Virus record (IMG/VR): IMGVR_UViG_3300009703_004110
Coordinates: 186,001 to 250,000 of that record
Length of the DNA stretch: 64,000 bases
Reading direction: 5' to 3' (one strand)
Shown here: in pieces, positions 32,122-33,795 of the stretch
Numbering within the stretch: position 1 is the stretch's first letter
Layout of the letters: each line of letters begins with the position of its first letter
Position numbers and translations under genes: made by a program
The notes under the pieces: model-generated
Told to the model about the DNA's origin: nothing
The model's input: only the letters and a program-made list of their open reading frames with translations
The model's database searches: none

Positions 32122-33795
32122 TTACTTTAGTTTACTAAAAAACTCTACCCTCTCGCGTTTTGATTTGAGATCGTGGATCTCTAACAATTTTACGCGCTCT
32201 TCAGGGTTTAAATCAAAAATGTTGATCTTATCAGCTAGTATCTGGCGTAATGCATTTACCTCTTGCCTACTGAATCTAACAGAACTGAGCTGATAATCTA
32301 TAAATGCCTCCATAGAGACAGGGAACAACTCACTTAGTATCTCATAAATAGCATTTGCGTACACTTGAATTTCTTTTTGTGCGTGTGAATCCATCCTTGC
32401 TTTCAAGAATAGCATCCAATCTCCAAGATTTGCCGTAACAAACGCTTCAGTATATTGTCCCATTGGAAGCACGGAACGGGCCTGCTCTCTGCAGACCCCT
32501 GCTTTTAATAGTCTCTGATAAGAAGCTTCTGAGTCCCTATGTGCATATTCTTGTATTTTATCTGCATATTCATGTAGGGGCGTATCATGATGCATAAAAG
32601 CAGGATATGTCTTAAGTCCTATATCTTTTAAGGTCCCATCTAACTGCTTATCACCAGCTTGTTTGTTGGTCGAACTTGGTTGGCGCCACTCATTCGCACC
32701 AATCCATTTTTCTTTTGGCATTACACTATAACGTGCGCTCATAACATTCCATGCGAATCGATCGTGCAATTTGTTACCCATAAAGCATTTAACCTTATGT
32801 TCTGTACTTTAAATTAGGTTATATGTACAGTTCAGACTATATCATCAGTTTTTTTAACTGCTGCGCGCTCGTGGTCCTTCATAATGTTAATAACATCGTT
32901 TGAACTAGTCGTTGAACCTTCCGAAAGATCACTCTTAAGGCTTGGCTGCTGATTGTCCACCTCAGGATGTCCCAGCAATTCACGCAGTTTTTGGTGCGCC
33001 ACGTAATAAGTATGTGTTTTTCTATCATACTTTACGAATCCAGCTTTGAATAATTCTAAACCTATAATTTCTAAAGAGTGATGCGCCTTTTGGTGCACAC
33101 TTTTGTTTTTACATAGATCTAAATTTTCTAGCTGATTATTTAATTTATCCTCATCAATATGGTGTACAATTTCTGTAGACTTAAGATTCCTGCCTAAGTG
33201 TTGCTCTATAACAAGACGATGTTCTCGTTTGTACTTGCCTTTCGCAACCCTTATATTTTTATAGCCATCTTCGGTCCATTGAATTCCGCCCTTCCAGTTT
33301 ACAAGACTTGTTGCACAAGGCTGACAATATGTTTTGCCACTATCACCATTTCTTCTTTGTCCCTTGTTATAGCTTTGAAATGTTGTTTCGCCATGCTTTG
33401 TACACTTATCGCACTTATATTTAATTCTTTTTCCGGAATTCGGTTTTAAGCTAGAAATTAATACCCCGCAAATTGTTTTATTGTCTAATAGCATGTTTTT
33501 TCTCTCCACGCTATTATATTACATAATTAGTAAAAATTGATTAACGCACCCACTGATTATGTATAAAAATAGGAAGTCTGACATGCACCTTGATCTGACA
33601 CATAGCAAAGGGACTATAATGTGCATGTCTCATTAGATATCTGACTAGGTTAGCATCATCTTGCACTGTCTTTGTGCCTTTGGCATAAGACACTCTAGCT
33701 GCTTGCGCAATATCACTATCTTTTCCAAAGTAATCTATAAGACGCACAAACCCATCGTCTAATACTTTAAATTCTTTTCCAATTAATTCATTCAT
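32122..33795 (-). CDS. thyX: FAD-dependent thymidylate synthase ThyX, two exons (33795-33544 and 32766-32122; 298 aa spliced)
   Basis: exon 1 AQAARVSY...HYSPF...PIFIHNQWVR; exon 2 HDRFAWNVMSARY...CREQARSVLP...FLKARMDSHAQKEI; joined in frame. Confidence 0.92.
32767..33543 (-). mobile_element. group I self-splicing intron (IA2-like), 777 nt
   Basis: 5' exon ends in U (CGU|UAA); ends ...AACAAAUUG; IGS GCGCACC (32999-32993) pairs with exon GGUGCGU; P10 CGUG/CACG; P4 UGCUG/CAGCA; P7 GACUA/UAGUC; S element GAUAUAGUCU. Confidence 0.92.
32832..33494 (-). CDS. intron-encoded HNH homing endonuclease
   Basis: EHRLVIEQHLGR...VHHIDEDKLNNQLENL; GGAGAG SD before MLLDNK; C-terminal codons run through the ribozyme core. 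Confidence 0.88.
   Translation of the reverse strand: MLLDNKTICGVLISSLKPNSGKRIKYKCDKCTKHGETTFQSYNKGQRRNGDSGKTYCQPCATSLVNWKGGIQWTEDGYKNIRVAKGKYKREHRLVIEQHLGRNLKSTEIVHHIDEDKLNNQLENLDLCKNKSVHQKAHHSLEIIGLELFKAGFVKYDRKTHTYYVAHQKLRELLGHPEVDNQQPSLKSDLSEGSTTSSNDVINIMKDHERAAVKKTDDIV

What the first reader, a model, noticed from the sequence alone, without database searches (positions are those of the whole stretch)
32767..33543. Group I intron inside the thyX signature, with its HNH gene in the P1 loop and reading through the ribozyme core
Seen: splice junction QWVR|HDRF. The internal guide sequence (GCGCACC, with P10 arm CGUG) lies about 540 nt downstream of the 5' splice site, so the endonuclease ORF occupies L1. 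Its last ~55 codons overlap P3-P7 and stop inside the S element. Established: T4 introns carry ORFs in peripheral loops such as L6a or L9.1 and target thyA-type td, nrdB and nrdD. Inference: a thyX target with an L1-encoded HNH is a less common arrangement, and translation of the ORF must compete with core folding.
Basis: partly seen in the sequence, partly recalled or inferred. Interest (0 to 1): 0.65.

Follow-up and report, generated by a model that had tools for sequence, protein, structure and literature searches.

The report
Mobile intron splitting phage thyX gene
A self-splicing group I intron splits the thymidylate synthase (thyX) gene of a 332 kb phage, and its homing-endonuclease gene sits in the first loop of the ribozyme and is read straight through the catalytic core, an uncommon layout that turns out to be shared by a whole clade of phage introns.

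Summary
Window 32767-33543 (- strand, 777 nt) is a group I intron (Rfam RF00028, 71.4 bits). It lies between the R and H codons of the ThyX RHR motif. Both exons match Pfam Thy1 contiguously, and 80 of 80 uninterrupted thyX homologues align across the junction with no gap.

The internal guide GCGCACC (32999-32993) lies 544 nt downstream of the 5' splice site. An HNH_3 ORF (33494-32832, 220 aa) fills L1. Its last 55 codons are the guide sequence plus P3 to P7, and its UGA abuts the 3' strand of P7.

This is a clade trait, not a one-off. All six HNH homologues whose loci I looked up (43-77% identity) sit in thyX at the same site. The crAssphage dUTPase intron has the same layout. P1, P10 and 28 of 43 core pairs covary.

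The core-encoded tail (aa 181-220) is predicted disordered. A conserved hairpin sequesters the start codon.

Best reading: a mobile IA-type intron showing an extreme, inherited case of "core creep". ORFs in P1 and ORF/core overlap are both published, and splicing was not tested because no RNA data exist. I rate it a new variant of a known kind, of moderate interest.

The parts
33544..33795 (-). thyX exon 1 (84 codons, ends ...QWVR). Its last 7 nt, GGUGCGU (33550-33544), form the 5' strand of P1.
   Evidence: Pfam Thy1 positions 1-76, E 7e-14. 80 of 80 homologues are contiguous with exon 2.
32767..33543 (-). Group I intron, 777 nt. Its first three bases are an in-frame UAA (33543-33541) and it ends with the terminal G at 32767.
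   Evidence: RF00028 at 71.4 bits. Boundaries come from exon homology and from P1/P10 pairing.
33486..33516 (-). 10 bp hairpin with the Shine-Dalgarno GGAGAG (33507-33502) at the stem edge and in the loop, and the AUG (33494-33492) in its 3' arm.
   Evidence: -11.2 kcal/mol, z -5.3, 0 of 200 shuffles fold as well. Equivalent hairpins occur in L203, L205, L199 and L207.
32832..33494 (-). HNH homing-endonuclease ORF: 220 codons plus UGA. The N-terminal part has four invariant Cys in two Cys-x-x-Cys pairs (likely a zinc finger), followed by the HNH_3 domain. The last 55 codons are ribozyme sequence.
   Evidence: Pfam HNH_3, E 1.4e-10. Invariant C28, C31, C57, C60, H111, H112, N120, H134 and H138 in 26 homologues. 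AF2 pLDDT is 86-98 for most of aa 1-175, with a dip around aa 61-70, and below 50 for aa 181-220.
32993..33003 (-). P10 arm CGUG (33003-33000) and internal guide sequence GCGCACC (32999-32993), the 3' strand of P1. In the ORF the guide encodes Ala-His-Gln.
   Evidence: Complementary to the exon ends. Three double compensatory changes in L209. The centroid fold of the precursor contains this long-range helix.
32835..32987 (-). Catalytic core: P3 5' strand 32987-32981; P4 32977-32972 with 32952-32947; P5 32967-32956; P6/P6a 32946-32916; R/P7 5' strand 32915-32906; P7.1 32905-32874; P3 3' strand 32867-32861; P8 32860-32846; S/P7 3' strand 32845-32835.
   Evidence: Rfam alignment. RNAalifold on 8 relatives: 28 of 43 pairs keep pairing through changes on both sides. 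Coordinates.
32767..32830 (-). P9 (32830-32802), P9.1 (32799-32779) and the 3' terminal segment ending in the terminal G (32778-32767).
32122..32766 (-). thyX exon 2 (214 codons plus stop, begins HDRFAWNVMSARYS). Its first 4 nt, CACG, pair with the P10 arm.
   Evidence: Pfam Thy1 positions 80-191, E 4e-24..

Best explanation
This is a mobile group I intron of the IA type. It has no P2 and carries an extra P7.1 hairpin between P7 and the 3' strand of P3. It is inserted between the Arg and His codons of the ThyX RHR active-site motif in a 332 kb phage from a subsurface metagenome.

How it most likely works:
1. The intron is transcribed as part of the thyX mRNA. The ribosome translating exon 1 stops at the UAA formed by the first three intron bases.
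2. The exon 1 end GGUGCGU pairs with the guide GCGCACC 544 nt downstream, forming P1 across the whole endonuclease gene.
3. The core (P3 to P9.1) folds. A guanosine cofactor attacks at the U.G pair. P10 (CGUG with CACG) aligns exon 2, and the exons are ligated to give a 298-codon thyX message.
4. The HNH enzyme encoded in L1 cuts or nicks intron-less thyX alleles near this conserved site during co-infection, and repair copies the intron in (homing).

The ORF has no stop of its own before the core. It runs on through the guide sequence and P3-P7 and ends at the UGA that follows the 3' strand of P7. This is an extreme, inherited form of 'core creep'. The part encoded from P5 onward is probably a disordered appendage with no catalytic role.

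A ribosome inside the core would unfold it. Translation is therefore kept low on the precursor by a hairpin that holds the AUG, and most enzyme is probably made from the excised intron RNA, which still carries the complete ORF.

Shown here: the intron, its boundaries, the pairings and their covariation, the ORF layout, and its conservation in relatives. Inferred: splicing activity, homing, the timing of translation, and that the tail is dispensable.
For: Intron and boundaries: RF00028 at 71.4 bits. Thy1 profile positions 1-76 and 80-191 lie on the two exons. The junction has zero gap in 80 of 80 homologues.

Long-range P1 and P10:
- The exon/guide complement is the top-scoring site in the window and in L205 and L207; in L199 it scores level with the best.
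- In L209 the exon end is CACCGU and the guide is GCGGUG, three double compensatory changes. P10 there is CAU with AUG.
- The dUTPase introns pair GACUAU with GUAGUC and GACUCU with GGAGUC.
- The ensemble centroid of the 817-nt precursor contains P1.

Core: 28 of 43 pairs covary. Eight relatives score 59-92 bits on RF00028.

ORF:
- HNH_3 domain with invariant Cys4 and His/Asn residues.
- Best structural match is I-HmuI.
- All six HNH homologues whose loci were looked up (43-77% identity) lie between Thy1 fragments.
- 28 of 28 homologues read the stretch from guide to R in one frame, while their ends after R vary. Variable ends are what core creep predicts (PMC3073962).

Tail: pLDDT below 50 for aa 181-220.

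Translation control: start-codon hairpin with z -5.3, conserved in relatives, and an in-frame stop as the first intron codon in all six thyX introns.
Against: - No RNA evidence exists. The only runs holding this DNA are DNA assemblies of subsurface metagenomes, so splicing is inferred.
- No intron-less allele was seen in those assemblies, so ongoing homing is not shown.
- The frame from guide to R is open in every homologue. In 119 other cores with the same Q and R motifs, that frame carries a stop between Q and R in 60. This could mean the tail, at least up to R, is under selection and not merely tolerated.
- AF2 places aa 164-173, which the guide and P3 encode, in the folded part of the protein.
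- P7 is invariant, so covariation says nothing about it.
- No sigma-70-like promoter was found inside the intron of the window.
Confidence: 0.85

Rival explanations
1. Dual-use core. The stretch from the guide sequence to R is under selection both as ribozyme and as protein. Either the tail peptide has a function of its own (DNA or RNA binding, a maturase-like role, or control of stability), or translation through the core is an evolved switch that makes splicing and endonuclease synthesis mutually exclusive on one RNA molecule.
For: - 28 of 28 homologues keep the frame open from guide to R through at least 16 different P6 sequences. Half of 119 other cores with the same Q and R motifs have a stop there in that frame.
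- aa 164-173, encoded by the guide and P3, are modelled as a strand plus helix with pLDDT 73-86.
- The layout persists down to 31% protein identity and across two target genes.
Against: - The homologues are related by descent, so the 28 are not independent.
- Residues 181-220 are predicted disordered.
- Amino acids in the helices change non-conservatively while base pairs are kept (for example LKSDLS against PGREPS in P6a). This is the signature of RNA-level constraint, not protein-level constraint.
- Termination after R varies freely, either in P7.1 or at S.
Confidence: 0.15
2. The element is a decaying or non-splicing relic. thyX is then a split or dead gene, and the HNH gene acts as a free-standing endonuclease between two gene fragments.
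For: No RNA data show ligated exons. Two relatives (L203, L207) have large LAGLIDADG insertions in the core and fall below the Rfam threshold, so decay does occur in this lineage.
Against: - The window's core is complete and scores above threshold.
- Every helix is intact, and relatives show compensatory changes that only make sense under selection for folding.
- Both exons are open, contiguous and conserved.
- The guide and P10 match the exons exactly.
- The terminal G and the U.G pair are present.
Confidence: 0.05

Closest known systems
crAssphage (Carjivirus communis, BK010471) dUTPase gene KP06_gp34 intron with HNH gene KP06_gp35, and its relatives in other Crassvirales
   Same: The cores share 68% nucleotide identity over P3-P9. 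In both, the HNH_3 ORF lies between the 5' splice site and the guide sequence. Both read through the core in the same frame (ELL..NQQPS..GSTT..DDIV) and stop at the same UGA after UAGUC.
   Different: The target gene is dUTPase rather than thyX. The HNH proteins are only 31% identical. The GenBank record says only 'contains intron insertion' and 'putative intron-encoded HNH endonuclease', and I found no description of the L1 placement or the core overlap.
Phage T4 td intron with I-TevI (IA2; thyA-type thymidylate synthase)
   Same: Both are phage group I introns in a thymidylate synthase gene at a conserved active-site region. Both carry a mobile endonuclease ORF whose 3' end overlaps core sequence, and in both the translation start is held in an RNA hairpin (PMC3073962; here).
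   Different: The host enzyme is unrelated (ThyA against ThyX). I-TevI is a GIY-YIG enzyme looped out of P6a with a 20-nt overlap. Here an HNH gene sits in L1 with a 165-nt overlap that includes the guide sequence and all of P3-P7.
Synechocystis PCC 6803 tRNA-fMet intron (I-SspI) and Physarum PpLSU3 (I-PpoI): ORFs in P1
   Same: The endonuclease ORF is inserted in the P1 loop. I-SspI overlaps P1/P2 by 61 nt (Table 1 of PMC3073962).
   Different: Those endonucleases belong to other families (PD-(D/E)XK and His-Cys box). Their hosts are tRNA and rRNA genes, and their overlap stops at P2 or is nil. Here the host is a phage protein-coding gene and the overlap covers the whole catalytic core.
Bacillus phage SPO1/SP82 DNA polymerase introns with I-HmuI/I-HmuII
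   Same: Both are phage IA-type introns with an HNH endonuclease. I-HmuI is the best structural match of the model (1u3e, probability 0.96, E 0.11). The core also resembles that of the DNA polymerase intron of Bacillus phage Smudge.
   Different: The SPO1 ORF lies in P8 with a 9-nt overlap (PMC3073962). The sequence similarity of the proteins is too low for HMMER to detect against the PDB.
[quoted passage not shown]
   Same: Ribosomes read through core helices on the way to, or as part of, the intron-encoded protein.
   Different: Those ORFs are fused to the upstream exon and the product is processed. Here the ORF is free-standing with its own Shine-Dalgarno and AUG, and the exon frame is closed by a stop at the splice site.

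Membership tests
Group I intron (Rfam RF00028) | Covariance-model score above the curated threshold | tested here: met
   71.4 bits against a threshold of 50, E 3.9e-16, full model 1-253. Eight relatives score 59-92 bits.
Group I intron (Rfam RF00028) | P1 formed by the 5' exon end and an internal guide sequence, with U.G at the splice site; P10 with the 3' exon | tested here: met
   GGUGCGU pairs with GCGCACC, and CACG with CGUG. Compensatory changes occur in L209 and in the dUTPase introns.
Group I intron (Rfam RF00028) | Conserved core helices P3-P9 supported by covariation; terminal G | tested here: met
   28 of 43 pairs show changes on both sides. The intron ends in G at 32767. P7 is invariant, so covariation is uninformative there.
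Group I intron (Rfam RF00028) | Guanosine-dependent self-splicing with exon ligation | not testable with these tools
   No RNA run holds this sequence.
Subgroup IA (IA2-like, phage type) | Extra pairing(s) P7.1/P7.2 between P7 and the 3' strand of P3; similarity to phage IA2 introns | tested here: inconclusive
   One extended hairpin lies at 32905-32874, with compensatory changes in L199. There is no P2. No subgroup-specific model was available.
HNH_3 homing endonucleases (I-HmuI-like) | HNH beta-beta-alpha-metal motif with conserved His and Asn | tested here: met
   PF13392, E 1.4e-10. H111, H112, N120, H134 and H138 are invariant in 26 sequences.
HNH_3 homing endonucleases (I-HmuI-like) | Fold similarity to a solved HNH homing endonuclease | tested here: inconclusive
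   Foldseek top hit is I-HmuI 1u3e, probability 0.96 but E 0.11 and TM 0.27-0.34. No sequence hit in the PDB.
HNH_3 homing endonucleases (I-HmuI-like) | Site-specific cleavage of the intron-less allele | not testable with these tools
   Indirect only: all six homologues whose loci were looked up occupy the same thyX site.
ThyX (Pfam Thy1, PF02511) | The two exons together cover the Thy1 profile without gap or overlap | tested here: met
   Profile positions 1-76 and 80-191; the three unaligned residues HDR fill positions 77-79. Zero gap in 80 of 80 homologues.
'Core creep' ORF/core overlap (Edgell, Chalamcharla and Belfort 2011) | The endonuclease ORF extends into core helices up to the next in-frame stop, and the extension length varies between lineages | tested here: met
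   165-nt overlap. Homologues end either in P7.1 or at S. The published table's largest overlap is 81 nt.

The most novel reading that the evidence does not exclude
The catalytic core of this intron clade is a true dual-coding sequence. The frame from the guide sequence to R is kept open by selection, and a ribosome reading the endonuclease gene must melt P1, P3-P7 and the guide sequence. The same RNA molecule can therefore either splice or make endonuclease, never both. That would be a built-in switch that partitions transcripts between host-gene rescue and intron spread, or else a tail peptide with a function of its own.
Probability: 0.15. Interest if true: 0.7.

Novelty: new variant of a known kind. 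Interest (0 to 1): 0.45.

Why it matters
Mobile group I introns with HNH genes are textbook, so the kind is known. What is new is the combination.

- A flavin-dependent thymidylate synthase (thyX) is the homing target, at its RHR active-site motif. This is a functional analogue of the classic T4 td/thyA case, arrived at independently.
- The endonuclease gene lies in L1, and its reading frame covers the guide sequence and the entire catalytic core: 165 nt, about twice the largest overlap in the published 'core creep' table.
- The layout is inherited across a clade that includes thyX introns in several metagenomic phage lineages and the dUTPase intron of crAssphage, one of the most abundant human gut viruses.

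This gives a natural series in which the core creep hypothesis, and the conflict between translation and ribozyme folding, can be tested with real variants: tails that end in P7.1 or at S, and cores invaded by second endonucleases.

There is also a practical point. Gene callers split such genes into three ORFs (Thy1, HNH, Thy1), so thyX and dut are mis-annotated in many phage genomes.

Tried and rejected
- Near-identity search of phage GenBank records with the locus found nothing. The phage has no close sequenced relative.
- tblastn of the HNH against GenBank phages gave at best 33% identity over most of its length, or 50% over the HNH motif alone. The thyX intron lineage is so far seen only in metagenomes.
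- RNA evidence: the single run search found only two DNA assemblies of subsurface metagenomes and no RNA. Laying them showed the source contig, a 151-nt identical piece in a second study, no joints and no intron-less allele. Splicing and homing could therefore not be tested.
- Rfam's own alignment places P1/P2 at 33067-33027 with several non-pairs. I rejected that placement in favour of the long-range P1, which matches the exon, sits at the same offset from P4 in all relatives and covaries.
- Intron-internal promoter: the sigma-70 scan found none upstream of the ORF in the window. L209 has a TTGACA-17-TACTAT match by eye. I treat this as a weak lead only.
- My crude ORF-position classes 'ORF 3' of S' and 'upstream ORF ends in P3-P6' are confounded by the flanking exons. 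I use only the two clean classes from that call.
- The MFE fold of the whole precursor does not contain P1, although the centroid does. Thermodynamic folding alone is not decisive here.
- HMMER search of the PDB with the HNH profile found no hit.
- Literature searches for a thyX group I intron found none. The library holds open-access papers only, so this is not proof of absence.
- I did not build or search a joined (spliced) ThyX sequence.

Full report
**What is there**

On the minus strand of the window, an 84-codon ORF (33795-33544) and a 214-codon ORF segment (32766-32125) both match Pfam Thy1 (ThyX). The first covers profile positions 1-76. The second covers positions 80-191 starting at its fourth residue, so the two pieces abut on the profile.

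I tested the junction exon by exon. In 80 uninterrupted thyX homologues fetched from IMG/VR, the last residue of exon 1 and the first residue of exon 2 align to adjacent residues, with no gap, in 80 of 80 cases.

The 777 nt between the exons (33543-32767) contain the only Rfam group I intron hit of the window and of the whole 332 kb phage record: RF00028, 71.4 bits, E 3.9e-16, at 32802-33067.

The insertion point lies between the Arg and His codons of the ThyX RHR signature. A more canonical relative reads ...EWHR|HRTQSYNEMSGRY. That these are active-site residues is from my own knowledge of ThyX.

**Anatomy** (coordinates)

- Exon 1 ends GGUGCGU, and the intron begins with an in-frame UAA.
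- The only good complement, GCGCACC, lies at 32999-32993, 544 nt downstream. CGUG sits directly 5' of it and pairs with the first four bases of exon 2 (CACG). This is the classic P1/P10 guide arrangement.
- Five A residues then lead straight into P3, so there is no P2.
- The rest of the core follows in order: P4, P5, P6/P6a, R (P7 5' strand), one extended P7.1 hairpin, the P3 3' strand, P8, S (P7 3' strand), P9, P9.1, and a terminal G at 32767.
- Rfam's alignment forces a short-range P1/P2 at 33067-33027 with several mismatches. I reject that placement.

An ORF with a GGAGAG Shine-Dalgarno and an ATG at 33494 runs to a UGA at 32834-32832. The upstream GTG at 33509 is not the conserved start. 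The ORF matches HNH_3. It has two invariant Cys-x-x-Cys pairs and invariant His/Asn residues of the HNH motif.

Its last 55 codons are, base for base, the guide sequence, P3, P4, P5, P6, P7, P7.1, P8 and the P7 3' strand. The UGA directly follows UAGUC.

**Is the long-range P1 real?**

Comparative evidence says yes.

- All six HNH homologues (43-77% identical) whose loci I looked up lie between Thy1 fragments in other phage contigs from marine and other metagenomes.
- In four of these thyX introns with DNA on hand (L199, L205, L207, L209), and in a sister group in dUTPase genes including crAssphage, the guide sits at the same offset from P4 and matches its own upstream exon.
- The pairs are: window GGUGCGU with GCGCACC; L209 CACCGU with GCGGUG (three double compensatory changes; its P10 is CAU with AUG); crAssphage GACUAU with GUAGUC; L058 GACUCU with GGAGUC.
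- RNAalifold on eight cores recovers P3, P4, P5, P6, P6a, P8, P9 and P9.1. In 28 of 43 pairs, pairing is kept through changes on both sides.
- The ensemble centroid of the whole 817-nt precursor contains the long-range P1. The MFE structure does not.
- Eight relatives pass the Rfam threshold at 59-92 bits.

**How unusual is the layout?**

A scan of IMG/VR for the exact Q...R core motif gave more than 114 contigs. Among 119 cores:

- 8 (7%) have a long ORF that starts at least 150 nt upstream and reads through Q to R.
- 18 have an ORF between R and S.
- The rest have none, or only the flanking exons.

The published record already has ORFs in P1 (I-SspI with a 61-nt overlap of P1/P2; I-PpoI with none). 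It also has a named hypothesis, 'core creep', for ORFs that extend into the core. The overlaps tabulated there run from 0 to 81 nt, and I-TevI in td has 20 nt (PMC3073962).

Here the overlap is 165 nt and includes the guide sequence itself.

The crAssphage dUTPase intron (BK010471, gp34/gp35) has the same layout and the same stop. Its record says only 'contains intron insertion'.

I found no paper on a thyX group I intron (open-access library only). GenBank phages hold no close homologue of this HNH.

**Is the tail a protein or a by-product?**

- All 28 close homologues read the stretch from guide to R in one frame (KLRELLG..NQQPS..EGSTT). About half then continue to DDIV-stop at S, and the others stop in P7.1. 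Variable ends are what core creep predicts.
- AlphaFold2 with a 26-sequence alignment gives pLDDT 86-98 for most of residues 1-175 (with a dip around aa 61-70) and below 50 for residues 181-220.
- Where helices covary, the encoded residues change non-conservatively. P6a reads LKSDLS in the window and PGREPS in L199. This points to RNA-level constraint.
- Against a pure by-product: in the 119 other cores, the same frame has a stop between Q and R in 60, yet none of the 28 homologues does. Residues 164-173, encoded by the guide and P3, are modelled as folded. Because the 28 are related by descent, I treat this as suggestive only.

**Translation against folding**

A ribosome on the last 55 codons must open P1, P3-P8 and P7. 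Three features fit a need to limit this:

- The exon frame closes at the first intron codon in all six thyX introns.
- A 10-bp hairpin (33516-33486; -11.2 kcal/mol; z -5.3; 0 of 200 shuffles as stable) holds the AUG. Equivalent hairpins with different sequences occur in L203, L205, L199 and L207. This resembles the I-TevI case cited in PMC3073962.
- The ORF lies wholly inside the intron, so the excised intron can serve as its mRNA after splicing. This last point is my inference.

**Limits**

No RNA data exist for this phage. The only holders of the sequence are DNA assemblies of subsurface metagenomes. One is the likely source, and a second study holds a 151-nt identical piece of exon 2. No intron-less allele appeared in them. 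Splicing, homing and the cleavage site are therefore inferred from strong comparative evidence, not observed.

**Verdict**

It is a mobile IA-type group I intron in thyX with an L1-encoded HNH whose frame covers the catalytic core. That trait is shared by a clade including the crAssphage dUTPase intron. It is a new variant of a known kind and of moderate interest.

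Noticed in passing
L207:325-1700 (Logan DRR337523 contig, thyX intron): The same thyX intron carries two endonuclease genes. The HNH ORF stops just after R, and a separate 203-aa LAGLIDADG_2 ORF is inserted between R and the 3' strand of P3. A 2025 intron database paper (PMC11835236) says multi-endonuclease group I introns had not been reported before its own fungal mitochondrial cases. This would be a phage example with two different families. It falls below the Rfam threshold, probably because of the 620-nt insert.
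   Followed up: partly
L203:2001-3155 (JGI 3300053772 contig, thyX intron): A 384-aa ORF. A segment of about 420 nt carrying a LAGLIDADG motif (..MAGLIDGEGC..) is inserted in frame between P3 and P4. This gives an HNH-LAGLIDADG fusion that still reads on through Q, R and S to the same UGA. Whether this intron can still fold is unclear, and it has no Rfam hit at threshold.
   Followed up: partly
L002:1431-3115 (BK010471, crAssphage dUTPase gp34/gp35); also L058, L073, L015: The crAssphage dUTPase intron and relatives have the HNH ORF in L1 reading through the core to the same UGA. The exon/guide pairs are GACUAU with GUAGUC and GACUCU with GGAGUC. The insertion is in the conserved dUTPase motif (..GTLDY|GYRGE..). 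The record does not describe this architecture.
   Followed up: partly
L055, L063, L067 (IMG/VR contigs): A second set of introns shares the Q and R motifs but has a different P4 region. They sit in what looks like a T4 gp32-like single-strand DNA-binding protein gene, and they also have 237-357-codon open frames that start far upstream and read through the core.
   Followed up: no
L087:5758-6268: Two group I intron cores in tandem about 60 nt apart on one contig (RF00028, 59 and 66 bits). The first carries the L1-type ORF.
   Followed up: no
window 32755-32766 and 33544-33555: This ThyX and those of L199, L203, L205 and L207 carry a variant signature R-H-D-R-F-x-W-N-V-M-S-x-R-Y instead of the canonical R-H-R-x-x-S-x-N-E-x-S-x-R-Y seen in L209. 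The intron sits at the same R|H position in both variants.
   Followed up: no
window 32506-32656: A second subsurface metagenome from a different study (run X2) holds a 151-nt contig identical to part of thyX exon 2. This phage or a very close relative therefore occurs in more than one sample.
   Followed up: no
G000:C1:63913-64236 (outside the window; locus L212): This is the only other weak match to the HNH protein in the genome (E 0.0055, 34% over residues 25-143). The intron's endonuclease has no close free-standing paralogue in this phage.
   Followed up: no
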